This document shows, piece after piece, positions 1,537-41,838 of a stretch of DNA of 64,000 nt. How positions within the stretch are numbered: position 1 is the stretch's first letter; every line of letters begins with the position of its first letter. Under the pieces are notes generated by a model. That model was not told where the DNA came from and ran no database searches. It saw nothing but the letters and a program-made list of their open reading frames with translations. Both the position numbers and the translations under genes were made by a program. The DNA lies in IMG/VR virus record IMGVR_UViG_3300032236_002285, positions 248,001-312,000 of that record. One strand, written 5' to 3'.

Positions 1537-1566
1537 AAAAGCCCTCTTAATGAGGGCTTTCTTTTT
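1535..1566. terminator. bidirectional intrinsic terminator
   Basis: AAAGCCCTC-ttaat-GAGGGCTTT flanked by A/T runs, between convergent genes. Confidence 0.8.
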
Positions 1567-4501
1567 ATCTTAATAAAGTGATATTACCTTTCTTATAGAA
1601 TCTCTTACCTTTATATGAATAAGCTTCTGCTTCATAAACATAAACACCAATCGGACAAGGCTCACCTTTAAATCTACCATCCCAGCCTTCATCTATATTC
1701 TTTGTTTCAAATACCATCTGACCCCATCTATTGAATATTCTAAAATGATCCAATGTAGCAATACCATGATGTTGTACTTTAATTATATCATTAGGTGAAG
1801 AACCCGGTGAAAAAGCATTAGCCACATCAATATAAGAATCATCTTCTACAATCACAACAACTGTATCAGTTACTTCACAACCATATTCTGTTTTAGCATT
1901 GACAGTATAAATAATACTAGATTGTACTGAAGTAATAGGTGATGATATACAAGGATTACTTAAACCATTAAGCGGAAACCAATTAAAGTATAAACAATTA
2001 CCACCTGGTGTAAATTGATATGATTCACCTGGATATAATCTAATCGTATCTGGTAGATTAATACTTGCTAAGTTTTTAATCTCTACATTTACAAGAGTAG
2101 AATCTATACAACCTGTTACTTCTTGTGCCACGACTAAATAAGTAAAATTACCTGGAGGCCATACTGTTGGCTCTTGAGCCGTATCACTACTAATATATAA
2201 ATTAGGGTACCAATGAATCCAAGTTAAAGGAGCGGCAAAAGTACTTAATAACTTAGTAGAATCTCCAGGACACAATGGTTTTATTCCTAAAGGTTGGAAA
2301 AAATTACTTGCAATTACCGTATAAGTCGCATCATCACTTCCATTACATCCGATTGGTGTTGTTACCGTTAAGTTAACATTTTGACTCAATACACTATTAA
2401 AGATTGGATTCGCTATTGATGGGTTATTAAACGCACCTGAAGGTGTCCAAGTGTAAGTGTAAAAAGGATATGTTCCTGGTGTTATTATTGGATCACATTG
2501 AATTGTATCACCATTACATATTGTTCTGTCCGCCCCAATAAACACAGTTGGATTTGGTTGAACATCAATATAGATTGTCTTAATTGAATCTTTACATCCT
2601 GTCTTGGTTGCTTTGATTGTATATAACCTTGAGGTGTCAGGTGTAATCGTTGGTGACATTATGTTTGGATTACTCACAAATAAATTAGGTGTCCATTTAT
2701 AAGTATAACGATTATCACCAGTTACATTTATGTTAACCGTATTACCCTTACAAATCGCAGTATCTTTATTGTTTAGTTTGAACCCTTGTAATACTTTTAT
2801 TTTCAATGTATCATAACGAGCACATTGATTTAATCCATTTGGAGTTATCTTAACAATATAAGTCGTATCTTTTGTAGGAGTACAAATTGGATTATTAATA
2901 GTATCCTTATTCAAAAAAGTTGAAGGAAACCATTTAACACTAAAAATTGTGTTAGCACTTGGAATTAAATTAGTATTCAATAATAACGAGTTATTGATAC
3001 AAGTTACAGTATCTGGTCCCAAATTGAATATCGGTATTGGTGATACTGTTACGGTAGTCGTATCTTTGTATTTATCACAAACACCCATCAAATTACTTGT
3101 AACCACATATTGAGTTGTTACAGTTGGATTAGCAAATGGAGCAGGACAATTAGTACAAGTTAATGAAGTCACAGGCGAACCACCAGGTAAAACTGACCAA
3201 GTGAATTGGGTACCACCAGCAACTTGCAACATAGCATAATCACCAATACATATTATTGGATATGTGGTGATATGAGTTTGTTGCCAAATATAAATTGGTA
3301 CAATAAATGTTTGTGATACAGGAATACCAGGAGGTGTACAAGTAGAATCTTTAATAGTAAATGTTAATATCCTTAAACCTGTATCAATTAATGAAGGAGA
3401 CCAATTAAAACAAGTTCTAACTGAATCTGTAAATGGATGAGTTGTAGTAAGTGTTGAACCAGGAGTGGTAATGCTATTATTAGATGATACAACTAATATA
3501 GCATTTGAATTAGTTGATTTGGCATCAAAACAAAATGATATTGTATGACCACCACATCCTTCTATTCTACCATTGTTCCAAGTACCACCTACAATAGATA
3601 CTGTATCTAAATTCAAGGTTGGTGGAGGGATGGTACAAGCTTTAACAATAATTTGTATATCTCTCATCACAGAACCTATTAACACACCATTTCTCCATTC
3701 TTTTACAAAAACAGTAACAACTGCAACTTGTTGAATGTTAGGTGTAAATGATATCTGTCCTGTTGTTGGACTAATAGTAAATGTATTGTTTGTACTTAAT
3801 GGGTTATTAGTTAAGTTATAGGTTACGGGTGGTGAAGTTGTGTTTGTAAATCCTATGTCTGAACCCGCAATAACATTACAACCGGCTGAACTTGTTTTTG
3901 GTTGAATTATAGAAAATGACATTGAATCGTTATTAGGGTCAACAGCGCCATTATTATAGTTGTATGGCATATTAACACAAAGATAAGGTACTGGTTTTAC
4001 GGTAAAATAAGGTGATGAATTACCTTGAGCATATTGATTGTTAAGCATTGCTTCAACATACATATTCTGAGTACCAGGTTGATATAAATTAGTAATGGCA
4101 TTATTTCTAGCACCTTCAGAAATATAAAATTTCCATGAATTACATCTTGAAGGCAGTGTGATTGTGTTTTCATATATCCACTCTCTATAACCAGGGAAGG
4201 TACCACCGTTACAAGTACTTGGGTAACCAGGACAACCGGTACTTACTTCTTGTCCATTGGTTGGACTTGTAATTTTACTGAGTGTTATGTTAGTACACCA
4301 ATTAGTACAAGGATTAAAACAATAACATAAAACATCACTGGGTTCTGGAATACCAGTACAATCTCTATAAAATTTGAATGTAATTTTATATGTTGAATCT
4401 GATATCCAACTATAAAGTAGTTCACCGCCAGCGCAGTGAGATGCTTTGCTCACGTTAGCAAAGGAAAGTAGCATAATTAATGCTAAGAGTAATCGTTTCA
4501 T
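1565..4501 (-). CDS. secreted T9SS type-B cargo (gliding motility-associated C-terminal domain, Ig/PKD-like repeats)
   Basis: Sec signal peptide; SHCAGGELLY..FYRDC N-terminus; C-terminal NAFSP..IFNRWGQMVF..GWDGRFKG..GVYVY..GNITLLR (CHU_C / type-B CTD). Confidence 0.85.
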   Translation of the reverse strand: MKRLLLALIMLLSFANVSKASHCAGGELLYSWISDSTYKITFKFYRDCTGIPEPSDVLCYCFNPCTNWCTNITLSKITSPTNGQEVSTGCPGYPSTCNGGTFPGYREWIYENTITLPSRCNSWKFYISEGARNNAITNLYQPGTQNMYVEAMLNNQYAQGNSSPYFTVKPVPYLCVNMPYNYNNGAVDPNNDSMSFSIIQPKTSSAGCNVIAGSDIGFTNTTSPPVTYNLTNNPLSTNNTFTISPTTGQISFTPNIQQVAVVTVFVKEWRNGVLIGSVMRDIQIIVKACTIPPPTLNLDTVSIVGGTWNNGRIEGCGGHTISFCFDAKSTNSNAILVVSSNNSITTPGSTLTTTHPFTDSVRTCFNWSPSLIDTGLRILTFTIKDSTCTPPGIPVSQTFIVPIYIWQQTHITTYPIICIGDYAMLQVAGGTQFTWSVLPGGSPVTSLTCTNCPAPFANPTVTTQYVVTSNLMGVCDKYKDTTTVTVSPIPIFNLGPDTVTCINNSLLLNTNLIPSANTIFSVKWFPSTFLNKDTINNPICTPTKDTTYIVKITPNGLNQCARYDTLKIKVLQGFKLNNKDTAICKGNTVNINVTGDNRYTYKWTPNLFVSNPNIMSPTITPDTSRLYTIKATKTGCKDSIKTIYIDVQPNPTVFIGADRTICNGDTIQCDPIITPGTYPFYTYTWTPSGAFNNPSIANPIFNSVLSQNVNLTVTTPIGCNGSDDATYTVIASNFFQPLGIKPLCPGDSTKLLSTFAAPLTWIHWYPNLYISSDTAQEPTVWPPGNFTYLVVAQEVTGCIDSTLVNVEIKNLASINLPDTIRLYPGESYQFTPGGNCLYFNWFPLNGLSNPCISSPITSVQSSIIYTVNAKTEYGCEVTDTVVVIVEDDSYIDVANAFSPGSSPNDIIKVQHHGIATLDHFRIFNRWGQMVFETKNIDEGWDGRFKGEPCPIGVYVYEAEAYSYKGKRFYKKGNITLLR

Positions 4502-5859: not shown

Positions 5860-6903
5860 ATGAGATATATTAAAACATACGAGTCATATAAAACTAACAA
5901 ACTTCTTCAAGAAGATTTTGACAGAAAGATAACTATTCTACATAATGTAGAATTAGATGGTACAGATGAAGAACTTTTTAGAAGAATTTTTGACAAAGTT
6001 GTTGAATCTATCAAAGATGAATCTATTAAACAAGAAATCAAGAATTATGTTTCTGAAAATCAATTACTAAATGAAGGATTTTTTGATAAATTAAAAGAAA
6101 GATTTCCTAAAGCGGCTCAAGTTTCTAAATCACTTTCGGATAAAGCTGAAGGTATTTTAAGTAATATCTTACAAAAGGTTAAAGATGCTGTTTCTTTTGT
6201 TAAAAAGATTACTGAAGGTATATCAGAGTTTTTCAAAATGGCTATTGAAAAAGGTAAAGCTTTTTATATTGAGCAATTGAAAACTGGTCAGTTAAAATCA
6301 AAAGTAGATGAATTAGTTAAAACTAAAAAAGAAGGTCTGAAGACTGATTTATTTACAATTGAAAGTGTTCTTAATTTTTATAGAGTAGATTTTATGGGTA
6401 AGATTAATAATACTATTACAACCAATCTTACTAACTTCTTAAATAAAGAACAAACTCCAATTGCAGAATCTATGTTAAATGAAGGTGGTAATGTTATTTC
6501 TACTTTAGTTCATGGTATTGAAGCTATTCCACCATTCTCTTGGTTGGAAGCCCTTGCTAAATCTGGTGAAAAGGGTGCTGCCGCAGTTATTGCTGCTTTA
6601 AGCTCTTTAACTCAAAAATTAGGTGGTCATGCTTTTCAACTTCCAGTTGTTGCTATTTTAATTGGTTTACTTATAGAACAAATCATTAAAGGCCAAGCAG
6701 GTCACTGGTTATTAGAATTAGCTGGTCCTACTCCACTAGGAATGGCAATTAAAGGTATTAAAATGACAGCTTCTATAATAGCACTTATTGTTGCCATTGA
6801 TTCTGTTGTTGGTGGTCAATTGGGTATTGTTAATAATCATCACGATGACCACACCGAACACGGTGAACATGCAGAAACTGAGACTACTGAAAACACAGCA
6901 TAA
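5860..6903 (+). CDS. putative head-internal/ejection protein with hydrophobic C-terminal helices
   Basis: MRYIKTYES tag, repeated LLxE/LNE sites, hydrophobic C-terminal third, late motif at 5847-5855. Confidence 0.5.
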   Translation: MRYIKTYESYKTNKLLQEDFDRKITILHNVELDGTDEELFRRIFDKVVESIKDESIKQEIKNYVSENQLLNEGFFDKLKERFPKAAQVSKSLSDKAEGILSNILQKVKDAVSFVKKITEGISEFFKMAIEKGKAFYIEQLKTGQLKSKVDELVKTKKEGLKTDLFTIESVLNFYRVDFMGKINNTITTNLTNFLNKEQTPIAESMLNEGGNVISTLVHGIEAIPPFSWLEALAKSGEKGAAAVIAALSSLTQKLGGHAFQLPVVAILIGLLIEQIIKGQAGHWLLELAGPTPLGMAIKGIKMTASIIALIVAIDSVVGGQLGIVNNHHDDHTEHGEHAETETTENTA

Positions 6904-6905
6904 AT

Positions 6906-6937
6906 AAAAAGAGGAAGTTAAAAACTTCCTCTTTTTT
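6906..6937. terminator. bidirectional intrinsic terminator
   Basis: AAAAAGAGGAAGT-taaaa-ACTTCCTCTTTTT. Confidence 0.8.
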
Positions 6938-7271
6938 ATCTTATTAAAGTAACATAACCTTTTTGAGCCATCATAGTTCCATCACAATCATATGTGATAT
7001 ACCAGTTATAAATTCCTAAATCTTGAACAACTCCATTAAAAGTTCCATCCCATCTTTTATCATTTAATTGAGATTCAAAAACGGTTTGACCCCATTTATT
7101 TTTAATTATAAAATTTAATATTTTATAATGATTACCAATTGGTCCAAAGGAATCGTTTTTACCATCATTATTTGGTGTAAAAGCGGATGGTAATGATAAA
7201 ACACAAGATTGAGATCTACCTAAATTAATAACACCTATTAAAAGCGCTATCATAAGCAATGTTTTTTTCAT
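6936..7271 (-). CDS. stand-alone T9SS type-B C-terminal domain with signal peptide
   Basis: Signal peptide followed directly by LPSAFTPNNDGKNDSF..NKWGQTVF..WDGTFNG..GIYNW..GYVTLIR. Confidence 0.85.
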   Translation of the reverse strand: MKKTLLMIALLIGVINLGRSQSCVLSLPSAFTPNNDGKNDSFGPIGNHYKILNFIIKNKWGQTVFESQLNDKRWDGTFNGVVQDLGIYNWYITYDCDGTMMAQKGYVTLIR

Positions 7272-7364
7272 AAATTATAACGTTATTTTCTTTATATATA
7301 ATACTGATAATCAAATGTTTTTATATTTTTTTAAAACAAATTAGGTTATTTAAAATAAACATCC

Positions 7365-7504
7365 TATCTTTGTATAACAAAACGAAAAAATAAATTACAA
7401 ATTAAAAAAAGATTAAAAAAGATTAAAAAAATTAGGTAGAATTAAAACTTTTTCTTAATTTTGTATAAAATAAGTCAAAAGGGACAAAAACTTTTTAATA
7501 TATA
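7365..7504 (+). promoter_or_regulatory. promoter block of tRNA operon 1: two Bacteroidota sigma70-type -7 boxes and a late motif
   Basis: TATCTTTG 7365-7372, TAATTTTG 7456-7463, TAATATATA 7496-7504; 7441-7504 closely matches 23022-23086. Confidence 0.7.
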
Positions 7505-7509
7505 CAACA

Positions 7510-7617
7510 ATGACAACAATGAATTTAAATATGAATATGAATCTAACGGTGGTGCTTAATACATTATGTATTAGACGCTCTGAGGGCTTCGTCATATCTA
7601 AACGATTTGTTGACTAA
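7510..7617 (+). CDS. attenuator leader peptide 1, MTTMNLNMNMNLTVVLNTLCIRRSEGFVISKRFVD
   Basis: ATG 5 nt after the late motif; TAA at 7615-7617; overlaps the antiterminator strand 7579-7591. Confidence 0.7.
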   Translation: MTTMNLNMNMNLTVVLNTLCIRRSEGFVISKRFVD

Positions 7618-7649
7618 ATGTATAACAAATTTTATAAAGGATAAAATCG

Positions 7650-7682
7650 AAACCCTCAGACAAAAAATCTGAGGGTTTTTTT
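7650..7682 (+). terminator. attenuator terminator upstream of tRNA array 1
   Basis: AAACCCTCAGA-caaaaaa-TCTGAGGGTTT plus T-run; 5' arm can instead pair with 7579-7591 (12 of 13 bp). Confidence 0.85.
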
Positions 7683-7697
7683 ATATGTAATAAATTT

Positions 7698-7769
7698 GGG
7701 GTGGTAGCTTAATGGTGAAGCAATCGGCTGTTAACCGATAGATTATAGGTTCGAATCCTATCCACCCCG
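7698..7769 (+). tRNA. tRNA-Asn(GTT)
   Basis: GGGGTGG/CCACCCC acceptor; ATCGG-CTGTTAA-CCGAT; TTCGAAT T-loop. Confidence 0.9.
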
Positions 7770-7780
7770 CAAAAATAAAC

Positions 7781-7865
7781 TGGTAGGTACCCGAGCGGTC
7801 TTCAGGGACTAGTCTGATATACTAGGTGAGAAATCACGACGTGGGTTCAAATCCCACCCTACCAA
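7781..7865 (+). tRNA. tRNA-Ile(GAT) with long variable arm
   Basis: TGGTAGG/CCTACCA; CTAGT-CTGATAT-ACTAG; variable hairpin GTGA-GAAA-TCAC. Confidence 0.8.
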
Positions 7866-7871
7866 CAACAT

Positions 7872-7943
7872 TCACTGGTAGCTCAGAGGCAGAGCAACCG
7901 CCTGTTAAGCGGTAGGTCGGGATATCGTAATTCACCCAGTGAG
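7872..7943 (+). tRNA. tRNA-Asn(GTT), irregular T-arm
   Basis: TCACTGG/CCAGTGA, G73; CCGC-CTGTTAA-GCGG; T-stem poorly paired. Confidence 0.75.
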
Positions 7944-7949
7944 CAAAAC

Positions 7950-8028
7950 GCCTCAGTAGCCGAGGTCGCCTTCTAAGCGACTAATCGTAACGGAACTGAA
8001 AATGTAGGTTCGAATCCTACCTGGGGTA
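7950..8028 (+). tRNA. atypical tRNA-Arg(TCT): D-arm nearly absent, long variable region
   Basis: GCCTCAG/CTGGGGT; GTCGC-CTTCTAA-GCGAC; GTAGG-TTCGAAT-CCTAC. Confidence 0.65.
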
Positions 8029-8083
8029 CAAAAAAAAGGGACACTAGTCTTATTAATATATAAGTAAAATGTAGGTTTGTATT

Positions 8084-8914
8084 ATGTTAGACTTTGAAAA
8101 TATTCAAAAAGACTTTGAAAGTGGTCTTTTTTATCAAAAAGATATACTAATTAAGTATAGTATATCAATTAAAAAATTAAGAACTTTTGTAAAAAAAGGT
8201 TTATTGAATAAAGAAAATTGGAAATTAAAAAAATATGAAGTAAAAAGAGAAACAAAAAAGTTAATATCAGAAGGTAGAAAAAAATGGTTGAAAGAAAATA
8301 CATCTAAACATCCTTGGAGAAATGGAAATAAATCTAAGCCTTGTGAGGAGTTTAAGAAATTCTTAAAAAGTAGGAATATTTTCTTTTTGGAAGAGGTTAT
8401 GATTTCAAAAGAAAGATTCTATTCGGTTGATATTTTAATACCTGAGTTCACTTCGGTTGTAGAAATTAATGGTAATCAACATTATAAATCTAATGGAGAA
8501 CTTAAAGATTACTATAGTGAAAGAAATAGTTTTATAAAAAATAAAGGATGGTCGATATATGAAGTACACTACTCAATTGTTTATAATTTAGAAATGTGTG
8601 ATTCTATTTTAGAAAATATTAAAAATAATAATAAAATCGATATACCATTTTATATAAAAAATAAGAAAGAAAAAAAATATAAGAATAGGGAAGAGTACTG
8701 GAATAAAAGAAAAATTAATAAATTGAATAGTTATAGTGAAAGATTAAATGAATTAAAAAACAGTAGTATAGATTTTAAAAAGATTGGATGGGTTAAACTA
8801 GCATCTGAGATATTAAAAGTTAAAAATGTAAATAAACTATTAAAAGAAATCGATCCAGAATTTTATAAAAATTGTTATAAAAGAAAACAAAATGCCGAGG
8901 TGGTGGAATGGTAG
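8084..8914 (+). CDS. DUF559/Vsr-like PD-(D/E)XK homing endonuclease inserted in tRNA array
   Basis: FYSVDILIP..VVEINGNQHY..RNSFI..GWSIYEVHY; Lys-rich; last 21 nt overlap tRNA-Leu. Confidence 0.7.
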   Translation: MLDFENIQKDFESGLFYQKDILIKYSISIKKLRTFVKKGLLNKENWKLKKYEVKRETKKLISEGRKKWLKENTSKHPWRNGNKSKPCEEFKKFLKSRNIFFLEEVMISKERFYSVDILIPEFTSVVEINGNQHYKSNGELKDYYSERNSFIKNKGWSIYEVHYSIVYNLEMCDSILENIKNNNKIDIPFYIKNKKEKKYKNREEYWNKRKINKLNSYSERLNELKNSSIDFKKIGWVKLASEILKVKNVNKLLKEIDPEFYKNCYKRKQNAEVVEW

Positions 8915-8976
8915 ACACGCTAGCCTTAGAAGCTAGTACCCGCAAGGGTGTGTGGGTTCGAGTCCCACCCTCGGTA
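8894..8976 (+). tRNA. tRNA-Leu(TAG)
   Basis: GCCGAGG/CCTCGGT; CTAGC-CTTAGAA-GCTAG; type II variable arm. Confidence 0.9.
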
Positions 8977-9001
8977 CTGAAGTGAAACGAAAGTTCACTA
9001 C
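8977..9001 (+). repeat. 25-nt tRNA-Leu 3' trailer, copy 1
   Basis: CTGAAGTGAAACGAAAGTTCACTAC, identical to 9810-9834; GAAA-capped hairpin. Confidence 0.9.
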
Positions 9002-9010
9002 AAAAAAAAT

Positions 9011-9096
9011 TGATAGGTTGCCGTAGTGGCCGAACGGTCCGGACTGTTAATCCGGTGACGAATAGTCCATCGTGGGTTCGAATCCCACCCTGTCAG
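9011..9096 (+). tRNA. tRNA-Asn(GTT) with long variable region
   Basis: TGATAGG/CCTGTCA, G73; CCGGA-CTGTTAA-TCCGG. Confidence 0.8.
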
Positions 9097-9103
9097 CAAA
9101 TAT

Positions 9104-9175
9104 AGTCCTGTAGCTTAATGGGAAAGCGCTTGCCTTACATGCAAGAGAGAGTCGGATCGTTACCGACCAGGACTA
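9104..9175 (+). tRNA. tRNA-Val(TAC)
   Basis: AGTCCTG/CAGGACT; CTTGC-CTTACAT-GCAAG; T-loop ATCGTTA. Confidence 0.85.
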
Positions 9176-9181
9176 CAAAAT

Positions 9182-9255
9182 TGGACTGTAGCTCATTTGG
9201 TTAGAGCGCCACGCTGATACCGTGGAGGTGGTCGGATCGTAACCGACCAGTCCAA
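9182..9255 (+). tRNA. tRNA-Ile(GAT)
   Basis: TGGACTG/CAGTCCA; CCACG-CTGATAC-CGTGG; T-loop ATCGTAA. Confidence 0.85.
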
Positions 9256-9261
9256 CAACAA

Positions 9262-9345
9262 GGTACTATGGCCGAGTGGAGTCTTTAAGACGGGAGGCAG
9301 TGGTCTGCAAAACTTCTCACACTGGTTCGAATCCAGTTAGTACCT
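9262..9345 (+). tRNA. tRNA-Cys(GCA) with expanded D-loop
   Basis: GGTACTA/TAGTACC, U73; loop CTGCAAA; extra GTCT-TTA-AGAC hairpin in the D-loop. Confidence 0.75.
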
Positions 9346-9350
9346 CAAAC

Positions 9351-9422
9351 GCTTCTTAAGCATTAATGGTGATGCACTAGTCTTGTAAACTAGAGAAATC
9401 GGATCGTTACCGGTAAGAAGCT
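9351..9422 (+). tRNA. tRNA-Thr(TGT)
   Basis: GCTTCTT/AAGAAGC; CTAGT-CTTGTAA-ACTAG. Confidence 0.85.
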
Positions 9423-9428
9423 CTAAAT

Positions 9429-9500
9429 TGTTCTGTAGCTCAATGGTAGAGCGCTTCTGTGACATGGAAGAGGTAGTCGGATCGTTACCGACCAGGACAA
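9429..9500 (+). tRNA. tRNA-Val(GAC)
   Basis: TGTTCTG/CAGGACA; CTTCT-GTGACAT-GGAAG. Confidence 0.8.
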
Positions 9501-9525
9501 CAAAATAATGGATGGTGATTAAGAG

Positions 9526-9598
9526 TGTTACTTCGTGAAATGGTATACACATTTGTCTTAAAAACAAACTTTTGAGGGTTCAAGTCCCTCAGTAAAAT
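9526..9598 (+). tRNA. degenerate tRNA-Leu(TAA)-like element lacking the variable arm
   Basis: Leu-type D-arm GTGAAATGGTATACAC; TTTGT-CTTAAAA-ACAAA; GAGGG-TTCAAGT-CCCTC; acceptor stem has a mismatch. Confidence 0.55.
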
Positions 9599-9625
9599 CA
9601 CTCTTTGAACTTTCCTCCATTATAT

Positions 9626-9709
9626 GCCGATGTGGCTCAGTGGCGACAGCACTGGTTTTGTAAACCAGAGACGAATAGTCCAACGGGGGTTCGAGTCCCT
9701 CCATCGGCT
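9626..9709 (+). tRNA. tRNA-Thr(TGT) with long variable region
   Basis: GCCGATG/CATCGGC; CTGGT-TTTGTAA-ACCAG. Confidence 0.85.
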
Positions 9710-9724
9710 CAAAATAAATCACCT

Positions 9725-9809
9725 GCCTGGGTGGTGGAACGGTAGACACGCTGGACTTAAAATCCAGTGGGCAGTAATGCCCGTGAGGGTTCGAGTCCCT
9801 CTCCAGGTA
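9725..9809 (+). tRNA. tRNA-Leu(TAA)
   Basis: GCCTGGG/TCCAGGT; CTGGA-CTTAAAA-TCCAG; type II arm. Confidence 0.9.
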
Positions 9810-9834
9810 CTGAAGTGAAACGAAAGTTCACTAC
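9810..9834 (+). repeat. 25-nt tRNA-Leu 3' trailer, copy 2
   Basis: Identical to 8977-9001. Confidence 0.9.
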
Positions 9835-9840
9835 TAAATT

Positions 9841-9911
9841 ATTGGGATAGTTTAATGGTAAATCGTGGGCCTGATATGCCCGTGTTCTTGGTTCGATTCC
9901 AGGTCTCAATA
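9841..9911 (+). tRNA. tRNA-Ile(GAT)
   Basis: ATTGGGA/TCTCAAT; TGGGC-CTGATAT-GCCCG. Confidence 0.8.
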
Positions 9912-9916
9912 CAAAC

Positions 9917-9988
9917 TTCGATATGGCCTATTGGTAGGGTGCAGGGGGACATGTTCCTGAGGACTTGGTTCGATTCCAGGTATCGATA
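9917..9988 (+). tRNA. tRNA-like element, anticodon undetermined (8-nt loop GGACATGT)
   Basis: Acceptor, D- and T-arms present (CTTGG-TTCGATT-CCAGG); non-canonical anticodon loop. Confidence 0.5.
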
Positions 9989-9995
9989 CAAACAT

Positions 9996-10082
9996 CGCGG
10001 GGTAGAGTAGAGGTCAAACTCACTGGGCTCATAACCCAGGGTTGCGCAAGTGACACGTCAGGTTCGAATCCTGCCCCCGCTA
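9996..10082 (+). tRNA. initiator-type tRNA-Met(CAT) with long variable arm
   Basis: Unpaired C1:U72; three consecutive G-C pairs in CTGGG-CTCATAA-CCCAG; extra GTTGC-GCAA-GTGAC hairpin. Confidence 0.8.
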
Positions 10083-10088
10083 CAACAA

Positions 10089-10161
10089 GCAGTCATCGTA
10101 TAGTAGGTGATTACACCACCTTGGTACGGTGGAGATTCCGGTTCGAATCCGGGTGATTGCT
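10089..10161 (+). tRNA. tRNA-Thr(GGT)
   Basis: GCAGTCA/TGATTGC; CCACC-TTGGTAC-GGTGG. Confidence 0.85.
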
Positions 10162-10166
10162 CAAAT

Positions 10167-10247
10167 GCCCAGATGGTGGAATGGTATACACGCCAGTCTA
10201 AGAAGCTGGTTCCTTCGGGATTGAGAGTTCGAGTCTCTCTCTGGGCA
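10167..10247 (+). tRNA. tRNA-Leu(AAG)
   Basis: GCCCAGA/TCTGGGC; CCAGT-CTAAGAA-GCTGG; Leu-type D-arm and variable arm. Confidence 0.85.
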
Positions 10248-10255
10248 CAACATAC

Positions 10256-10340
10256 GCCGGTGTGATCCGATGTGGTAATGGAGTTCGGCTCATATCCGAA
10301 TTGGTTTATCCTATTGCTGGTTCGACTCCAGCCACCGGTA
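10256..10340 (+). tRNA. tRNA-CAT (elongator Met or lysidine Ile2), long variable region
   Basis: GCCGGTG/CACCGGT; TTCGG-CTCATAT-CCGAA. Confidence 0.75.
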
Positions 10341-10345
10341 CAAAT

Positions 10346-10426
10346 GTCAGAATGGTGGAATGGTATACACGCTAGTTTCAAAAACTAGTGCCGAAAGGTA
10401 TGAGAGTTCAAATCTCTCTTCTGATA
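10346..10426 (+). tRNA. tRNA-Leu(CAA)
   Basis: GTCAGAA/TTCTGAT; CTAGT-TTCAAAA-ACTAG. Confidence 0.88.
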
Positions 10427-10448
10427 CTCGATAAAATAAAAAATAAAA

Positions 10449-10730
10449 ATGGAAAAGATTATCGACATCGTTAGAGATAACGTTGCAAGATTCGACTGGG
10501 CTTCTGAAGGAGTCCTCTACTACAAAGTAGAAACTGAAAAATATATCTATCACTTCCCAGTAGATATGAATAACAAAGAAGATGTGGGAACAGCTAATTT
10601 TGAATCAGAACATAAGGCTATAAATCTTATGAGATATTTAAGAAAAGCATCAGAAAACTTAGAAAAAATTAAAAACGATTCAGGTACGCCTGATTGGAAA
10701 AAGACATTAAGAGTTACACAAAAAGTATGA
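10449..10730 (+). CDS. hypothetical phage protein
   Basis: 93-aa ORF; its TGA overlaps the LeuRS ATG (ATGA). Confidence 0.6.
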   Translation: MEKIIDIVRDNVARFDWASEGVLYYKVETEKYIYHFPVDMNNKEDVGTANFESEHKAINLMRYLRKASENLEKIKNDSGTPDWKKTLRVTQKV

Positions 10731-11992
10731 AAGATGAAAAGTATATATGCGTTATGTTTCCTTACCCAAGTGGTTCGGGATTGCATGTAGGTCACTTTTA
10801 TAATTATGCTATAATTGATTCTTATTGTAGATACTTTAAATACAAAGGTCAACAAGTTTTTCAACCTTTTGGTTATGATGCCTTTGGTTTGCCGGCTGAA
10901 AACTATGCTAGAAAAGTAGGTCGTGATGCTAAAGATGTTACCTATGAAAACATCAGTCAATTTAGAAAACAGATGGAAAAGATGGATACCAACTATCAAG
11001 AAATGTTGGTAACATCTGATCCTTCTTATCAAAAATGGACACAATGGTTGTTTTTGAAATTGAAAGAACATGGCTTGGCTTATAAAAAAGATGGTGAAGT
11101 AAATTGGTGTCCTTCTTGTGAAACCGTATTGGCTCGTGAACAAGTTAAATCTGATTGTTGTGAAAGATGTTCAACTAAGGTAGAAATGAAAACAATGAAT
11201 CAGTGGTACTTTAAGATTACTGATTATAAAGAACGTTTGATTAAAAACTTGGATTGGATAGATTATCCAAAATCAACTATTAACGCGCAAAGAATGTGGT
11301 TGGAAAACTTGCACGATTGGTGTGTTTCTCGTCAAAGAAAATGGGGCTGTCCAATTCCAATAGAAGGTGAAACCGATACAATGGATACATTTGTAGATTC
11401 TTCATTTTACTATGTTAGATATTGTGATGCTACTAATGATAATGAATTGTGTGCTAAAGATAAATATAAACAAGTAGATGTTTATGTTGGTGGTAATGAA
11501 CACGCTTGTATGCACTTGATTTATGCTCGTTTTATTAATATGTTTTTGTATGATATTGGTGTTGTTTCAGAGGAAGAACCATTTAAGAAAGTTATACATC
11601 AAGGTATAATTTTGAACGAAGGTGAAAAAATGTCTAAAACAAAAGGTAATGTTATTAATCCAGATGATTATGACTCTGATGAATTGAGATTTTATATGAT
11701 GTTTATTGGTCATTATTTTGATGGTGGTTCTTGGTCTGACCAAAATATAGCTGGTATTAAAAGATTTATTAGTCGTTTTAAGGAGTGGATGTCAAGAGAA
11801 GGTTCTGATACTTTTGATATTGAATCATTTAAGAAAAAAATATTTAACTACACTGAGAGTTTTAAGTTTAATAAAGTTGTTAGTGAGTTTATGACAATAG
11901 TTAATCAAAATAGAACTAAAAACATAACACCTGAGATAAAAAAAGAATTGATTGAATTGATTAAGGTGTATATGCCTGGAATTAAAATTTAA
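10727..11992 (+). CDS. leuS: minimal leucyl-tRNA synthetase lacking the CP1 editing domain
   Basis: MFPYPSGSGLHVGH (HIGH), FGYDAFGLPAENYA, DWCVSRQRKWG, ETDTMDTFVDSSFYY, EKMSKTKGN; about 421 aa; start moved to ATG 10727. Confidence 0.9.
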   Translation: MKDEKYICVMFPYPSGSGLHVGHFYNYAIIDSYCRYFKYKGQQVFQPFGYDAFGLPAENYARKVGRDAKDVTYENISQFRKQMEKMDTNYQEMLVTSDPSYQKWTQWLFLKLKEHGLAYKKDGEVNWCPSCETVLAREQVKSDCCERCSTKVEMKTMNQWYFKITDYKERLIKNLDWIDYPKSTINAQRMWLENLHDWCVSRQRKWGCPIPIEGETDTMDTFVDSSFYYVRYCDATNDNELCAKDKYKQVDVYVGGNEHACMHLIYARFINMFLYDIGVVSEEEPFKKVIHQGIILNEGEKMSKTKGNVINPDDYDSDELRFYMMFIGHYFDGGSWSDQNIAGIKRFISRFKEWMSREGSDTFDIESFKKKIFNYTESFKFNKVVSEFMTIVNQNRTKNITPEIKKELIELIKVYMPGIKI

Positions 11993-23257: not shown

Positions 23258-23329
23258 AGTCCGTGGGTATGTTGGTATGAATAACCTCCTGTCACGGGGA
23301 AGAAGCCGGTTCGATTCCGGTACGGACTG
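23258..23329 (+). tRNA. tRNA-Asp(GTC)
   Basis: AGTCCGT/ACGGACT, G73; loop CTGTCAC. Confidence 0.85.
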
Positions 23330-23334
23330 CAAAA

Positions 23335-23408
23335 CGAGAAGTGACTAAGGTTTTAAGCACGCGCCGTCTGGAGCGGTGAGTTAGCAGGTTCGATTCCTGT
23401 CTTCTCGA
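23335..23408 (+). tRNA. tRNA-Pro(TGG)-like with atypical anticodon loop
   Basis: C1:G72 and A73 (CGAGAAG/CTTCTCG-A); CGCCG-TCTGGAG-CGGTG has C33 and A37. Confidence 0.6.
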
Positions 23409-23471
23409 CAACAAGTAGCTTTTGAGGCGAAAAATACTCTTTAGAGAATAGAGTAAAACAATTCTCAAAAT

Positions 23472-23544
23472 GGTCTCGTGGTTGAATGGTTACAATACCA
23501 CCCTGTCACGGTGCGAGATGCCGGTTCGATTCCGGTCGAGACCG
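23472..23544 (+). tRNA. tRNA-Asp(GTC)
   Basis: GGTCTCG/CGAGACC, G73; loop CTGTCAC. Confidence 0.9.
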
Positions 23545-23549
23545 CAAAA

Positions 23550-23620
23550 GGACATATAGCTTAAAAGGAAAGAGTACCTCCAGTGGGAGGGGAGTCTTGG
23601 TTCAAGTCCAGGTATGTCCG
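23550..23620 (+). tRNA. tRNA-like element, anticodon undetermined (shortened loop)
   Basis: GGACATA/TATGTCC, G73; D- and T-arms intact; CCTCC-AGTG-GGAGG. Confidence 0.5.
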
Positions 23621-23626
23621 CAAAAA

Positions 23627-23698
23627 GGTCTATTAGGGTAGTGGTTATCCTTCCCGACTGTCTATCGGGAGACACCGGTTCGAATCCGGTATAGACCG
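23627..23698 (+). tRNA. tRNA-Asp(GTC)
   Basis: GGTCTAT/ATAGACC; CCCGA-CTGTCTA-TCGGG. Confidence 0.88.
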
Positions 23699-23745
23699 CA
23701 AATGGGCTTTTCAAGACAAAAAGTTTGTAGATTACTTAATGAAAC

Positions 23746-23820
23746 GGTCTAGTGGTGAAGTGGCTATCATATCTGCCTGTCACGCAGAAGTAGAGGGATC
23801 GAAACCCTTCTAGACCGCCA
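23746..23820 (+). tRNA. tRNA-Asp(GTC), CCA encoded
   Basis: GGTCTAG/CTAGACC-GCCA; TCTGC-CTGTCAC-GCAGA. Confidence 0.9.
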
Positions 23821-23826
23821 AAAATT

Positions 23827-23901
23827 CGGGGTGTAGCGTAGTCCGGTTATCGCGCATGCTTTGGGAGCATGAAATCGTAGGTTCGAATCCTGCCACCCCG
23901 A
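23827..23901 (+). tRNA. tRNA-Pro(TGG)
   Basis: CGGGGTG/CACCCCG-A; CATGC-TTTGGGA-GCATG. Confidence 0.92.
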
Positions 23902-23932
23902 CAAAGAAACAAAATATTAATAAATAGAAATT

Positions 23933-23986
23933 ATGAGAACAACAACACAATACCAGCAACAACAACAAATTAATCCAACGGATTGA
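23933..23986 (+). CDS. attenuator leader peptide 3, MRTTTQYQQQQQINPTD
   Basis: Six Gln codons (CAA x5, CAG x1) in 17; TGA lies inside segment 2 of a 1:2/2:3/3:4 hairpin set. Confidence 0.85.
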   Translation: MRTTTQYQQQQQINPTD

Positions 23987-24014
23987 TAACGGTATCGTAT
24001 TGTCTAAACTTTAC

Positions 24015-24048
24015 AAACCCTATTCAATCTGATTGAGTAGGGTTTTTT
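24015..24048 (+). terminator. attenuator terminator upstream of tRNA-Gln x3 and glnS
   Basis: AAACCCTATTCAA-tctga-TTGAGTAGGGTTT plus T-run, ending 2 nt before tRNA-Gln. Confidence 0.88.
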
Positions 24049-24050
24049 AT

Positions 24051-24121
24051 TGTCTGATGGTGTAGTGGTAGCACAAGGGTCTTTGATCCCCTTAGTTCAG
24101 GTCCGATTCCTGATCAGACAA
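24051..24121 (+). tRNA. tRNA-Gln(TTG)
   Basis: TGTCTGA/TCAGACA; loop CTTTGAT; T-loop TCCGATT. Confidence 0.8.
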
Positions 24122-24128
24122 CAAATAT

Positions 24129-24210
24129 TGAGGAATAGAATAATGGCAGTTCACCCGCCTTTGAAGCGGAGAGAGAAATCTCAGTGTAGGTTCGAGTCCT
24201 ACTTCCTCAA
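24129..24210 (+). tRNA. tRNA-Gln(TTG) with long variable arm
   Basis: TGAGGAA/TTCCTCA; CCGC-CTTTGAA-GCGG; GAGA-GAAA-TCTC arm. Confidence 0.82.
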
Positions 24211-24216
24211 CAAAAT

Positions 24217-24288
24217 TGCTTTATAGTATATGGGTTAACATATCTGTCTTTGAAACAGATGAACTTGGTTCGAGTCCAAGTGGAGCAA
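24217..24288 (+). tRNA. tRNA-Gln(TTG)
   Basis: TGCTTTA/TGGAGCA; TCTGT-CTTTGAA-ACAGA. Confidence 0.85.
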
Positions 24289-24306
24289 CAAAAAATAATA
24301 ACTACT

Positions 24307-39462: not shown

Positions 39463-40485
39463 ATGATTAAAATTTATACCTATGCTCATAAAAGACCAGA
39501 TTTTATCGCAATTCAATTTGACTCTATTTCTAAATACCTTAAAGACGACTATGAATATGTTGTTTTTAACAACGCTATAGATGATGAAAATTTAAGTTCT
39601 CAAATAGAAAAAGAATGTCAAAAGATTAATATAAAATGTATAAAAGTACAGCTACAAGAAGATATTAATAATCAAAATTTTATTGATGGTTCTGAGATAC
39701 AATTTATAAATAACAATGGTAATTACAAATACGCTAATCCAAATGTTGCTTGTTCTTACCCTCTTATTTGGTCTTTTAAAAATATTATATCTAAAGATGA
39801 TAATGAAAATATAATTGTTATCATTGATTCTGATATGTTTTTTAGTAGAGATATCTCTATTAAAGATTTAATGACCGGTTATGATATAGCCTTTATTCCT
39901 CAATATAGAAATAATGATGTTCACTATATGTGGAATGGGTTTGTTATTATAGATGGTAGTAAAAATAATTTAAATGAAATAAACTGGTTTTGTGGAAGAG
40001 TTAATGGCCAACCTGTTGATGTTGGTGGACAAACTCATTTTTATCTTAAAAATAATCCTCAATTAAAAATAATGTATTTAGAGTTTTGGAATCTAAATGA
40101 ATTTAATAATGATGAATATAGATCACATCTAAATGGTAATATGTGCGTTCTTTTTTCTTTGAAAGACAATGAAGTTGTAGATTTTACTCCAATAGATAGT
40201 AGGTTTACTGATAATAATAAATTATTTGATTACGAAATAGATAAAGATAGTTTTGATGAGTATATAAAATACTATACAGATAATATTAAATATATTAAAA
40301 ACTCTGTAGAATCATTTAACTTTCCAAAACCAGAGCATATAGATTTTATAAAATGTTATAATAAAAAAATAGAAGACTCTTTTATTTTTCATTACAAGAG
40401 TGGTAGTAACTATCTAAACTTCCAAGATAATAATTATAATAAGTTAAAGACTAATGCTCTTAAAAAATTAATTGAATCACTATGA
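39463..40485 (+). CDS. putative GT-A fold glycosyltransferase
   Basis: YVVFNNA, IIDSDMFF (DxD), HYMWNG, DVGGQ. Confidence 0.6.
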   Translation: MIKIYTYAHKRPDFIAIQFDSISKYLKDDYEYVVFNNAIDDENLSSQIEKECQKINIKCIKVQLQEDINNQNFIDGSEIQFINNNGNYKYANPNVACSYPLIWSFKNIISKDDNENIIVIIDSDMFFSRDISIKDLMTGYDIAFIPQYRNNDVHYMWNGFVIIDGSKNNLNEINWFCGRVNGQPVDVGGQTHFYLKNNPQLKIMYLEFWNLNEFNNDEYRSHLNGNMCVLFSLKDNEVVDFTPIDSRFTDNNKLFDYEIDKDSFDEYIKYYTDNIKYIKNSVESFNFPKPEHIDFIKCYNKKIEDSFIFHYKSGSNYLNFQDNNYNKLKTNALKKLIESL

Positions 40486-41186
40486 TATTTTTTTCAATTG
40501 CCATACCCACTTATGAAATGAAAGGTAAAGGTGTTGAGTATTTAAGACAAAGCTTTCAAATATTAAAAAATCAAACATTTAAGGATTTTGAAATTGTTAT
40601 ATCCGACCATAGTAAAAATGATGATATAAAAAACTTATGTGAAGAGTGGAAAGATACTTTAGATATTAAATACTTCCAAAATACAAAAGATATAGGTAGC
40701 TCTTCATCAAATATAAACAATGCTATTATTAATTCTAAAGGTGAATGGGTTAAAATATTATTTCAAGATGACTTTTTATATAATGATCAATCATTAGAAA
40801 ACACTCATAAAGTAATTATTGAAAATTCTGATAAAAAATGGTTTGCTTCATCATGTGAACACAGCAATGATGGTAATACTTTTTATCGACCACTTTATCC
40901 AAAATGGGATGATAGAATGTTATATGGTTTTAATAGCATTAGCTCACCTAGTGTTATAACTATTAAAAATGATAGCACAAGATTATTTTTTGATAAAGAT
41001 TATATATGGTTAATGGATTGTGACTATTATCAAAGATACTTTAATAAGTTTGGTCTACCAACTATTATACCCGATATAACCGTGGTTAATAGAACATGGG
41101 GTGACCAGTTAACAAATACTATTCCTGATTCTGTTAAAAAGAATGAACATTATCAGATATTAAAAAAACATAGAATTATATGGTAA
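40482..41186 (+). CDS. glycosyltransferase family 2
   Basis: SIAIPTY, IVISDHS, ILFQDDF, WLMDCD. Confidence 0.85.
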   Translation: MIFFSIAIPTYEMKGKGVEYLRQSFQILKNQTFKDFEIVISDHSKNDDIKNLCEEWKDTLDIKYFQNTKDIGSSSSNINNAIINSKGEWVKILFQDDFLYNDQSLENTHKVIIENSDKKWFASSCEHSNDGNTFYRPLYPKWDDRMLYGFNSISSPSVITIKNDSTRLFFDKDYIWLMDCDYYQRYFNKFGLPTIIPDITVVNRTWGDQLTNTIPDSVKKNEHYQILKKHRIIW

Positions 41187-41836
41187 ATAAAATTAATTTA
41201 AATAACGTAACAATAGTCTCTGTTGCTTGTGTTAGACCATTAGAAACATTAAAGGCTATTAAATATTCAATGAATGGAATTGAGTTTAATAAAGCAATGT
41301 TATTAACAAATCATAATATAACAGACAATGAAGTTGAAATAGTTAATATTAATAATCTAGATTATGAAGGCTACAATCGGTTCATTGTTTATGATTTACA
41401 CAAATATATTGAAACAGAATTTGCTTTAATTGTTCAAGATGATGGATATGTTATCAACCCTAATATGTGGCAAGATGATTTTTTAAAATACGATTACATA
41501 GGTGCTCCTTGGGGGTTGCCTAGTGATAATTTTAGTTTTAGAGATCCATTTGGTAATTTAATTAGAGTTGGTAATGGTGGTTTTTCTTTAAGAAGTAAAA
41601 AGATATTATCACTTCCTACTCAACTAGGATTAGAATGGAAAAGCTATTTTGGTTTTTATAACGAAGATGGGTTTTTTACTTGTCACAATAGACATCATTT
41701 TGAAAAAGAAGGTTGTGTATTTGCTCCAATTGATGTTGCTAAGTATTTCTCACATGAAGCAGAGATACCAGAAACAATAGGTATCCAACCATTTGGATTT
41801 CATGGTAAATGGTCAAAATATTTAAGAATGTTATAA
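41180..41836 (+). CDS. DUF5672-family putative glycosyltransferase
   Basis: LIVQDDG, YDYIGAPW, VGNGGFSLRS, NED, FSHE, PFGFH. Confidence 0.8.
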   Translation: MVNKINLNNVTIVSVACVRPLETLKAIKYSMNGIEFNKAMLLTNHNITDNEVEIVNINNLDYEGYNRFIVYDLHKYIETEFALIVQDDGYVINPNMWQDDFLKYDYIGAPWGLPSDNFSFRDPFGNLIRVGNGGFSLRSKKILSLPTQLGLEWKSYFGFYNEDGFFTCHNRHHFEKEGCVFAPIDVAKYFSHEAEIPETIGIQPFGFHGKWSKYLRML

Positions 41837-41838
41837 AT

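What the first reader, a model, noticed from the sequence alone, without database searches (positions are those of the whole stretch)
6936..7271. Cargo-less T9SS CTD: signal peptide fused directly to a secretion signal, a possible T9SS decoy
Seen: the 111-aa protein is a ~21-aa signal peptide plus one type-B CTD with no passenger domain, and it has its own terminator. Inference: a secretion signal with no cargo could occupy the PorP/SprF shuttle or the translocon. That would block export of host SprB-like adhesins, stopping gliding or removing phage receptors (superinfection exclusion).
Basis: partly seen in the sequence, partly recalled or inferred. Interest (0 to 1): 0.8.

Follow-up and report, generated by a model that had tools for sequence, protein, structure and literature searches.

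The report
Cargo-less T9SS sorting tag in megaphage
A giant freshwater phage carries a small intact gene whose product is only an export signal peptide joined to a Bacteroidota type IX secretion "type B" sorting domain with nothing to deliver; the same bare-tag design recurs in several phages and in a bacterial family, and nobody has tested whether it blocks, caps or tunes the host's secretion and gliding machinery.

Summary
Window 6936-7271(-) is a clean 111-aa ORF made of a hydrophobic signal peptide (about 22 aa) followed directly by a complete type B T9SS C-terminal domain (PF13585 at 2.4e-14, TIGR04131 at 3.7e-11, AF2 pLDDT about 95). It ends at a bidirectional hairpin terminator. There is no trace of a lost passenger upstream.

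The host genome is a 476-481 kb, 30% GC freshwater megaphage, probably of Chitinophagales. The gene is an accessory cassette. A near-identical variant keeps it with two synonymous changes while the neighbouring gene is deleted. In relatives about 92% identical it is replaced.

The design is not unique. Bare signal-peptide-plus-CTD proteins of 106-111 aa arose in at least four separate CTD lineages on phage contigs. A conserved bacterial family of about 130 aa (Taibaiella, Chryseobacterium, Edaphocola) has the same layout. Small type B CTD proteins are strongly enriched on viral contigs (24/54 versus 1/63, p = 4e-9). None of the eight phage genes whose flanking ORFs I scanned had a PorP/SprF carrier next to it.

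The decoy idea fits published data that carriers are scarce, bind 1:1 and are not recycled, but it is untested. The native bacterial family suggests a capping or regulatory role is equally possible. This is a real, moderately interesting new variant of a known kind, with the mechanism inferred.

The parts
6936..7271 (-). Gene for the 111-aa signal-peptide-plus-type-B-CTD protein (stop codon at 6936-6938)
   Evidence: ORF. PF13585 and TIGR04131 hits. The identical protein is found on 7 contigs.
7206..7271 (-). Codons 1-22, a Sec-type signal peptide (MKKTLLMIALLIGVINLGRSQS) with likely cleavage before Cys23
   Evidence: Hydrophobic core with Kyte-Doolittle about 3.3. AF2 pLDDT about 61 here against about 95 for the rest. 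The -3/-1 rule was applied by inspection; no predictor was run.
6939..7205 (-). Codons 23-111, a complete type B T9SS C-terminal sorting domain of the 'CC...YDC' subfamily. Cys23 and Cys96 are nearly invariant (90% or more) across the alignment.
   Evidence: Alignments A1 and A3. Identity of 50-59% to the CTDs of bacterial proteins mostly 580-3000 aa long. AF2 model with four main strands.
6906..6936 (.). Bidirectional intrinsic terminator hairpin shared with the convergent 347-aa gene (5860-6903)
   Evidence: It is retained in variant L002.
7272..7424 (-). AT-rich upstream region (about 21% GC) that travels with the gene. It presumably holds the promoter, but no consensus promoter was identified.
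   Evidence: Sequence. GC content. It lies inside the block replaced in relatives.
6835..7424 (.). Presence/absence cassette. In contigs of relatives about 92-93% identical, this 590-bp block (3' end of the neighbouring gene, the terminator, the CTD gene and its upstream region) is replaced by 254 other bases.
   Evidence: read laying joint 6834>7425 in runs X3 and X4.
1565..4501 (-). Second phage-encoded type B T9SS substrate nearby: 978 aa, with its own signal peptide and a large passenger. Its CTD is only 40% identical to the 111-aa protein.

Best explanation
Shown: this is a real, intact, strain-variable accessory gene of a Bacteroidota-infecting megaphage. Its product is a signal peptide plus a complete type B T9SS sorting domain and nothing else.

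Inferred mechanism: in the infected cell the 89-aa mature protein is exported by Sec and recognised through its type B CTD. It is then loaded onto a host PorP/SprF-type outer-membrane carrier, since no carrier gene was found next to it. It stays there uncleaved as a passenger-less cap. These carriers are scarce, pair 1:1 with their substrate and are not recycled. A well-expressed bare CTD would therefore take carriers away from host adhesins of the same CTD subfamily (50-59% identical, within the range where carrier cross-talk was shown). This would strip or thin a class of surface adhesins.

Speculative last step: the benefit to the phage is surface remodelling, such as loss of adhesin receptors giving superinfection exclusion or less adsorption of progeny to infected cells, or arrest of gliding.
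For: - **Gene reality:** domain hits, all invariant CTD residues kept, a confident fold, a strong signal-peptide core, a terminator, and composition matching the phage (GC3 13% against 18%).
- **Conservation:** a variant phage (L002-L004) keeps the gene with 2 of 2 differences synonymous, while 794 bp of the adjacent gene and an 855-bp insert nearby are missing.
- **Recurrence:** bare signal-peptide-plus-CTD genes occur in at least four separate CTD lineages on phage contigs (24-46% identical to each other; the window's CTD is 60% identical to that of a 748-aa protein on viral contig L009). One of them sits in a bona fide phage with a head protease, RNA ligase and NAMPT.
- **Enrichment:** small type B CTD proteins of 200 aa or less make up 24 of 54 dereplicated viral ORFs against 1 of 63 bacterial ORFs, Fisher p = 4e-9.
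- **No carrier seen:** a Pfam scan of the window's ORFs of 230 aa or more listed no PorP/SprF family among the 25 of 44 families shown. The ORFs flanking eight other small phage CTD genes were scanned and none is a carrier.
- **Literature:** carriers are limiting, 1:1 and not recycled, and cross-talk occurs at about 44-68% CTD identity (PMC12618676). The CTD stays uncleaved on PorP and was proposed as a 'cap' (PMC9143113). SprF joins the gliding track only after a substrate is loaded (PMC12635249).
Against: - There is no expression, localisation or phenotype data. No RNA run was listed.
- Published work says efficient type B secretion needs 150-235 C-terminal residues (PMC12618676). This protein has 89, so it may be poorly secreted or not recognised.
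- Bacteria keep their own conserved cargo-less family of about 130 aa. This suggests a native, non-inhibitory role for bare CTDs.
- The gene is dispensable: it is replaced in close relatives.
- Two synonymous differences are weak evidence of selection.
- The LR745206 counterpart has a degenerate FTPNGDGxND block and may be decaying.
- The host and its carriers are unknown.
Confidence: 0.4

Rival explanations
1. The phage protein copies the role of the host's own minimal type B CTD protein. Bacteria keep cargo-less proteins of about 130 aa, perhaps as caps or stabilisers for unoccupied PorP-like barrels, or as assembly or quality-control factors. The phage protein would do the same supportive or neutral job, keeping the T9SS or envelope working during a long megaphage infection instead of blocking it.
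For: There is a large conserved bacterial family (89 of 112 hits have a signal-peptide-like N-terminus and 85 of these are 116-140 aa). It includes cultured Taibaiella species and shows conserved synteny in two genomes. The phage proteins L019/P0219/P0366 belong to that clade. PG1035 was proposed as a non-essential 'cap' for PorP (PMC9143113). The same phage also encodes a full-size 978-aa T9SS substrate that needs a working T9SS.
Against: The window's CTD does not belong to the bacterial minimal clade. It groups with CTDs of long adhesin-like proteins (50-60% identity against 39-46%). It therefore reached the design independently, by losing a passenger. The role of the bacterial family is itself unknown.
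Confidence: 0.22
2. The gene is a neutral remnant. A phage-borne long adhesin gene lost its passenger by an in-frame deletion, and the leftover signal-peptide-plus-CTD ORF persists for a while without function.
For: In the published 635-642 kb megaphages, a 107-aa signal-peptide-plus-CTD gene (LR745206) occupies the syntenic place of a SprB-repeat/PKD protein of at least 1147 aa (LR756502). The short copy has a degenerate conserved block. The window gene is absent from close relatives. Its nearest relative is a 748-aa protein on a viral contig.
Against: The ORF is intact with every invariant residue kept, and its junction falls exactly at the domain boundary. Its composition is fully ameliorated to the phage. 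It is retained unchanged in protein sequence while flanking DNA is deleted. The same end state arose in several lineages and persists through divergence down to 57% identity (P0219 against L019). Small CTD proteins are enriched on viral contigs.
Confidence: 0.15
3. The protein acts as a translocon or periplasmic jam, or as a signalling ligand. Lacking the extended region needed for export, the bare CTD stays in the periplasm. There it either sits unproductively in the SprA translocon or carrier entry site, or it binds a sensor in the way the PorA CTD binds PorY, changing T9SS gene expression.
For: Type B secretion signals are reported to need 150-235 residues (PMC12618676). A CTD can act as a periplasmic ligand of PorY (PMC12152298).
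Against: PorA carries a type A CTD and belongs to Porphyromonas. No type B precedent exists. Over-produced type B CTD fusions that were not secreted were not reported to poison the T9SS (PMC12618676).
Confidence: 0.1

Closest known systems
Type B CTD substrates of the T9SS (SprB, Fjoh_3952, Fjoh_1123 and others in F. johnsoniae; PG1035 in P. gingivalis)
   Same: It has the same C-terminal sorting domain (TIGR04131/PF13585), an N-terminal Sec signal and conserved sequence blocks. It is expected to bind PorP/SprF-like carriers without cleavage of the CTD.
   Different: Known substrates carry large adhesin-like passengers (the closest relatives here are mostly 580-3000 aa) and usually sit next to their carrier gene. 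This one has no passenger, no adjacent carrier gene, and is encoded by a phage.
Orphan type B substrates sharing one carrier (Fjoh_1123/1720/4934 with Fjoh_1677; PMC12618676)
   Same: The substrate gene is not linked to a carrier gene, so it depends on a carrier encoded elsewhere. Cross-talk is set by CTD similarity.
   Different: Those are host genes with passengers. Here the carrier would have to be the host's, so use of it is competitive by construction.
Bacterial family of about 126-132 aa, annotated 'gliding motility-associated C-terminal domain-containing protein' (Taibaiella, Chryseobacterium, Edaphocola), and the phage relatives of 106-118 aa (P0292, P0219, P0366, P0361)
   Same: It has the same cargo-less layout of a signal peptide followed by a type B CTD.
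   Different: The bacterial members have a linker of about 20 aa and lack the Cys pair. The window protein falls in a different CTD clade (39-46% identity). The family has no studied function.
Phage-encoded T9SS cargo (type A sorting domains on 'Cryophage' flexible genes, PMC7468147; T9SS sorting-domain proteins in crAss-like phages, PMC6949934)
   Same: A phage uses the host T9SS for its own exported proteins, and the genes lie in strain-variable regions.
   Different: Those carry enzymes or BACON/PA14 passengers and mostly type A CTDs. None was described as a bare sorting domain.
Prophage FimU-like minor pilins that disable type IV pili for superinfection exclusion (PMC12952977)
   Same: Conceptually, this is a phage-made look-alike of a host surface-machine part that would alter receptor display.
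   Different: It involves a different machine and fold. In that case the function was demonstrated; here it is only inferred.
PorA CTD as ligand of PorY (PMC12152298)
   Same: It is a precedent that a T9SS CTD can have a job beyond being a secretion signal.
   Different: PorA has a type A CTD, is a host protein and is a regulator. No homology beyond the general Ig-like fold was found.

Membership tests
T9SS type B sorting domain proteins (TIGR04131 / PF13585 CHU_C) | HMM match above the curated cutoff, covering the whole domain, at the extreme C-terminus | tested here: met
   PF13585 scores 53.7 bits (cutoff 27) over profile positions 2-86 of 86. TIGR04131 scores 43 bits (cutoff 35) over residues 26-111.
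T9SS type B sorting domain proteins (TIGR04131 / PF13585 CHU_C) | Conserved sequence blocks (FTPNxDGxND, NRWG, WDG, Y-rich strand, GxVxLxR) that are all required for secretion in SprB | tested here: met
   All invariant columns are present. Two conservative or unusual changes occur (NKWG for NRWG, GYVTLIR for GDVTLIR). The requirement comes from PMC12618676.
T9SS type B sorting domain proteins (TIGR04131 / PF13585 CHU_C) | N-terminal Sec signal peptide | tested here: met
   An n/h/c-region pattern with Kyte-Doolittle 3.3 in the core and low pLDDT over residues 1-21. This is heuristic only; no SignalP-type tool was available.
T9SS type B sorting domain proteins (TIGR04131 / PF13585 CHU_C) | Extended C-terminal region of about 150-235 aa reported as needed for efficient secretion | tested here: not met
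   The mature protein is 89 aa. The requirement comes from PMC12618676, so secretion competence is uncertain.
T9SS type B sorting domain proteins (TIGR04131 / PF13585 CHU_C) | Cognate PorP/SprF-like carrier gene adjacent (common, but not universal) | tested here: not met
   The neighbouring ORFs have no PorP/SprF hit. No such family appears among the 25 of 44 families listed for the window's ORFs of 230 aa or more (not exhaustive). The gene is therefore an 'orphan' substrate.
T9SS type B sorting domain proteins (TIGR04131 / PF13585 CHU_C) | T9SS- and carrier-dependent export and surface anchoring | not testable with these tools
   This needs expression in a T9SS host.
Phage-encoded inhibitor or decoy of a host secretion or motility machine | Demonstrated reduction of host substrate export, gliding or phage adsorption | not testable with these tools
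   Only indirect support exists: carriers are limiting (literature), no carrier gene was found on the phage, and the design recurs in phages.
Phage accessory ('moron'-like) gene | Self-contained unit with its own terminator, variably present among close relatives, not part of a core module | tested here: met
   Terminator. The 6835-7424 block is replaced in relatives. The gene is kept while its neighbours are deleted. It lies between tRNA arrays and small unknown genes. The promoter was not identified.
Bacterial/phage minimal CHU_C clade (P0274, P0299, P0292, P0219) | Groups with that clade by CTD sequence | tested here: not met
   Identity to that clade is 39-46%, against 50-60% to CTDs of long proteins. 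The FastTree topology places it beside L009 (748 aa), inside a clade of CTDs that otherwise come from long proteins. The tree is built on 92 aa and branch support was not examined.

The most novel reading that the evidence does not exclude
Phages of Bacteroidota have repeatedly evolved bare or nearly bare type B sorting domains (106-111 aa, 133-142 aa and the abundant forms of about 187 aa). These would act as 'carrier sponges' that occupy the host's scarce, non-recycled PorP/SprF carriers. That would disarm gliding adhesins and remove receptors. It would be a new class of phage-encoded secretion and motility inhibitors, or superinfection-exclusion factors, acting at the T9SS.
Probability: 0.2. 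Interest if true: 0.8.

Novelty: new variant of a known kind. Interest (0 to 1): 0.5.

Why it matters
Type B sorting domains are the less understood half of T9SS targeting. No structure of one has been described in the literature read here, and the rules of carrier pairing are only now being worked out. A natural protein that is nothing but the sorting domain is a ready-made minimal probe for carrier binding, export competence and loading onto the gliding track.

Phages hold many small type B CTD proteins without any carrier gene nearby. If these titrate host carriers, that would be a new way for phages to reshape the Bacteroidota cell surface. This is relevant because loss of gliding or T9SS function is a main route to phage resistance in flavobacteria (PMC9804748). 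If they instead act like the conserved bacterial minimal family, they point to an unstudied accessory component of the T9SS or envelope.

Tried and rejected
- **Pseudogene remnant upstream:** tblastn of 158 long homologues against 6800-8100 found nothing beyond the ORF. Rejected.
- **Recent duplication of the neighbouring 978-aa protein's CTD:** only 40% identity over 60 aa. Rejected.
- **Recent capture from a host:** GC3 of 13% is at or below the phage norm. Rejected as recent.
- **PHROGs:** no meaningful family for the protein or its neighbours.
- **Short homologues in the first searches:** nearly all are fragments of long proteins without signal peptides. Signal-peptide-bearing minimal proteins appeared in the profile searches restricted to short proteins and in the viral scan.
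- **dN/dS:** not feasible. L019-L022 are identical in DNA, and the window variants differ at only two sites.
- **Solved structures:** no type B CTD fold in the PDB beyond a sequence hit to GhpA 9flp. Foldseek gave only weak hits, among them type A CTDs (8gl8_D, 5m11, 6za2).
- **Expression:** no RNA run was listed.
- **Carrier gene next to phage CTD genes:** ten flanking ORFs, next to eight of the small viral CTD genes, turned out to be a GNAT, a PKD protein, a 2H phosphoesterase, a RecA-like protein, thymidylate synthase, a decarboxylase or unknowns.
- **Bacteroidota -7 promoter motif TAnnTTTG:** not found upstream by eye, and the sigma-70 scan was no better than shuffles. The promoter is left unassigned.

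Full report
**What is there.**
Window 6936-7271 on the minus strand is an ATG-started ORF of 111 codons. Pfam CHU_C (PF13585) covers residues 26-109 end to end (E = 2.4e-14). NCBIfam TIGR04131, the 'T9SS type B sorting domain', covers residues 26-111 (E = 3.7e-11). Both are above their curated cutoffs.

The first 22 residues (MKKTLLMIALLIGVINLGRSQS) have the basic, hydrophobic and small-polar pattern of a Sec signal peptide, with a core hydrophobicity of 3.3. I aligned the protein with the CTDs of 33 other proteins. The point where their CTDs begin ('CCxVxFPxAFTPN') coincides with Cys23, directly after the predicted cleavage site. The signal peptide is therefore joined to the domain boundary with no passenger at all.

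Every invariant column of the domain is retained. AlphaFold2 with a 77-sequence alignment gives pLDDT of about 95 for residues 23-111 and about 61 for the signal peptide. The model has four main strands, matching the published description of predicted type B CTDs (PMC12618676).

The gene stops one base from a 14-pair hairpin with T-runs on both strands (6906-6936). This hairpin also terminates the convergent 347-aa gene. No similarity to passenger regions of long homologues survives upstream.

**Whose gene it is.**
The window is part of IMG/VR UViG_3300032236_002285 (476 kb), which is the same sequence as a JGI contig of 481 kb. It is 30% GC. It carries 27 tRNA genes, several aminoacyl-tRNA synthetases, gp32, RNR, RNA ligase and a ClpB-like ATPase. 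It has distant DNA similarity to the 635-642 kb uncultured phages LR745206 and LR756502. DNA runs holding it are freshwater metagenomes.

The closest CTDs in genomes belong mainly to Chitinophagaceae and Chitinophagales (Flavipsychrobacter, Lacibacter and others). This suggests the host clade but does not prove it. The gene's GC (27%) and GC3 (13%) match or undershoot the phage average, so it is a long-term resident. A second type B substrate with its own signal peptide and a large passenger, 978 aa long, lies 2.4 kb away. Its CTD is only 40% identical.

**An accessory cassette.**
- Three other contigs (L002-L004) carry the gene with two nucleotide differences, both synonymous. In these contigs 794 bp of the adjacent 347-aa gene and an 855-bp segment containing the 276-aa ORF are missing.
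- In contigs of more distant relatives (about 92-93% identical flanks, runs X3 and X4), the block 6835-7424 is replaced by 254 other bases. This block holds the gene, its terminator and its upstream region.
- The gene is therefore dispensable and strain-variable. The published Cryophage T9SS cargo genes behave the same way (PMC7468147).

**Is the design unique? No.**
- *Phages.* LR745206 encodes a 107-aa signal-peptide-plus-CTD protein. The syntenic position in LR756502 holds a SprB-repeat/PKD protein of at least 1147 aa. The short one has a degenerate FTPNGDGxND block and may be decaying. A scan of IMG/VR found 455 CTD-encoding stretches. Among the best 80 are a 108-aa protein (L019-L022, which is P0292, seen on 22 contigs up to 159 kb) in a phage with a head protease, RNA ligase and NAMPT, and a 111-aa protein (L084). 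There is also a family of 133-142 aa and many proteins of about 187 aa with a small Cys-rich module before the CTD.
- *Bacteria.* A profile search restricted to short proteins found a large family of 126-132 aa made of a signal peptide, a linker of about 20 aa and the CTD. It occurs in cultured Taibaiella species, Chryseobacterium and Edaphocola. Of 112 hits, 89 have signal-peptide-like N-termini. In two Taibaiella-like genomes (one cultured T. chishuiensis, one a metagenome-assembled chromosome) the gene lies between a 1161-aa outer-membrane-like protein and a pyrophosphatase-OmpA fusion. The ESM Atlas also lists many CHU_C-only clusters of about 116-135 aa.
- *Independent origins.* The bare phage proteins are only 24-46% identical across lineages and fall in different parts of a CTD tree. 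The window protein sits among CTDs of long proteins, next to a 748-aa protein of viral contig L009 (60% identity). The design therefore arose several times.
- *Enrichment.* Among complete ORFs in the best 80 loci of each collection, 24 of 54 dereplicated viral proteins are 200 aa or shorter, against 1 of 63 bacterial proteins (Fisher p = 4e-9). There are caveats.

**Mechanism.**
Published work gives a frame for interpreting the gene:
- Type B CTDs bind cognate PorP/SprF-like outer-membrane carriers 1:1 and are not cleaved (PMC9143113).
- Carriers are barely detectable and are apparently not recycled. Over-produced CTD fusions are secreted only when extra carrier is supplied. Cross-talk occurs between CTDs about 44-68% identical (PMC12618676).
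- SprF becomes disulfide-linked to the gliding track only after a substrate is loaded (PMC12635249).

No PorP/SprF-like gene was found near the window gene. The ORFs flanking eight other small phage CTD genes were scanned and none is a carrier. These proteins must therefore depend on host carriers.

The best-supported reading is that the bare CTD is exported and occupies a host carrier as a passenger-less cap. It would compete with host adhesins whose CTDs it resembles (50-59% identity). The downstream benefit (receptor loss, superinfection exclusion, gliding arrest) is speculation. It rests on the known link between gliding or T9SS mutations and phage resistance (PMC9804748).

Several points count against this reading:
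- The literature reports that 150-235 residues are needed for efficient type B secretion.
- Bacteria keep their own cargo-less family, which suggests a native capping or regulatory role.
- There are no expression data.

Rival explanations are a host-like cap or regulator, a neutral deletion remnant, and a periplasmic jam or ligand modelled on PorA-PorY (PMC12152298).

**Verdict.**

I rate the gene as a new variant of a known kind, namely a phage-borne, cargo-less, orphan type B T9SS substrate. Interest is about 0.5. The most novel reading not excluded is a recurrent class of phage 'carrier sponges', at about 0.2 probability.

Noticed in passing
L168:6001-6390, L169:6001-6393, L007:8001-8396 (bacterial loci); proteins P0280-P0391: There is a conserved bacterial family of 126-132 aa proteins made of a signal peptide, a linker of about 20 aa and a type B CTD, found in Taibaiella, Chryseobacterium and Edaphocola. 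In two Taibaiella-like genomes it lies between a 1161-aa outer-membrane-like protein (weak Omp85/TolB hits) and a pyrophosphatase fused to an OmpA-like domain. No paper on this family was found.
   Followed up: partly
viral loci L023-L087 (for example L031, L036, L053, L069; CTD gene ending near 6260-6300): An abundant class of phage proteins of about 182-193 aa consists of a signal peptide, one small Cys-containing Ig-like module and a type B CTD. The neighbours are typical phage genes (RecA-like, thymidylate synthase, 2H phosphoesterase), and no PorP/SprF gene is adjacent.
   Followed up: partly
window 1565-4501 (-): A 978-aa phage-encoded type B T9SS substrate with its own signal peptide (MKRLLLALIMLLSFANVSKA). 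Its passenger matches no Pfam or PHROG family.
   Followed up: partly
window 8034-8888 (ORF 8084-8914, +): A 276-aa ORF with a weak RAP-domain hit sits inside the tRNA array. It is precisely absent from the otherwise 96-97% identical variant L002, which suggests an inserted mobile (homing-endonuclease-like) gene.
   Followed up: partly
window 6103-6896 (inside the 347-aa gene 5860-6903): Variant contigs L002-L004 have a 794-bp deletion that truncates this membrane-like, His-rich protein to 92 aa. The adjacent CTD gene is untouched.
   Followed up: yes
window 7698-10427 and 23258-24289: There are 27 tRNA genes in two arrays, with many duplicated isoacceptors (Asp x4, Gln x3, Leu x5, Ile x3). 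Several are unusually long (85-87 nt: Asn, Ile, Met, Thr, Leu). Two calls have abnormal anticodon loops (9917-9989 and 23550-23621).
   Followed up: no
window 40482-48045 (+): A glycan-synthesis block: GT2, DUF5672, two GT11 (fucosyltransferase-type), GT17 and two GDP-mannose-dehydratase/epimerase-like genes. This is another sign that the phage remodels the host surface.
   Followed up: partly
L005:4001-4324 (LR745206) versus L006:821-4264 (LR756502): At syntenic loci of the two published megaphages of about 640 kb, one has a 107-aa signal-peptide-plus-CTD gene with a degenerate FTPNGDGxND block. The other has a SprB-repeat/PKD type B substrate of at least 1147 aa. This looks like a snapshot of passenger loss.
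   Followed up: partly
window 7649-7679 and 7400-7430: A 12-pair bidirectional hairpin lies just before tRNA-Asn. A short tandem AAAAAAGATT repeat lies in the AT-rich spacer upstream of the CTD gene.
   Followed up: no
window 10694-11992 and other ORFs of 230 aa or more: The window holds MetRS-like and two GluRS/GlnRS-like synthetases, RNR small subunit, gp32, RNA ligase, a ClpB-like AAA+ protein and a STAND NTPase. This is typical huge-phage cargo.
   Followed up: no
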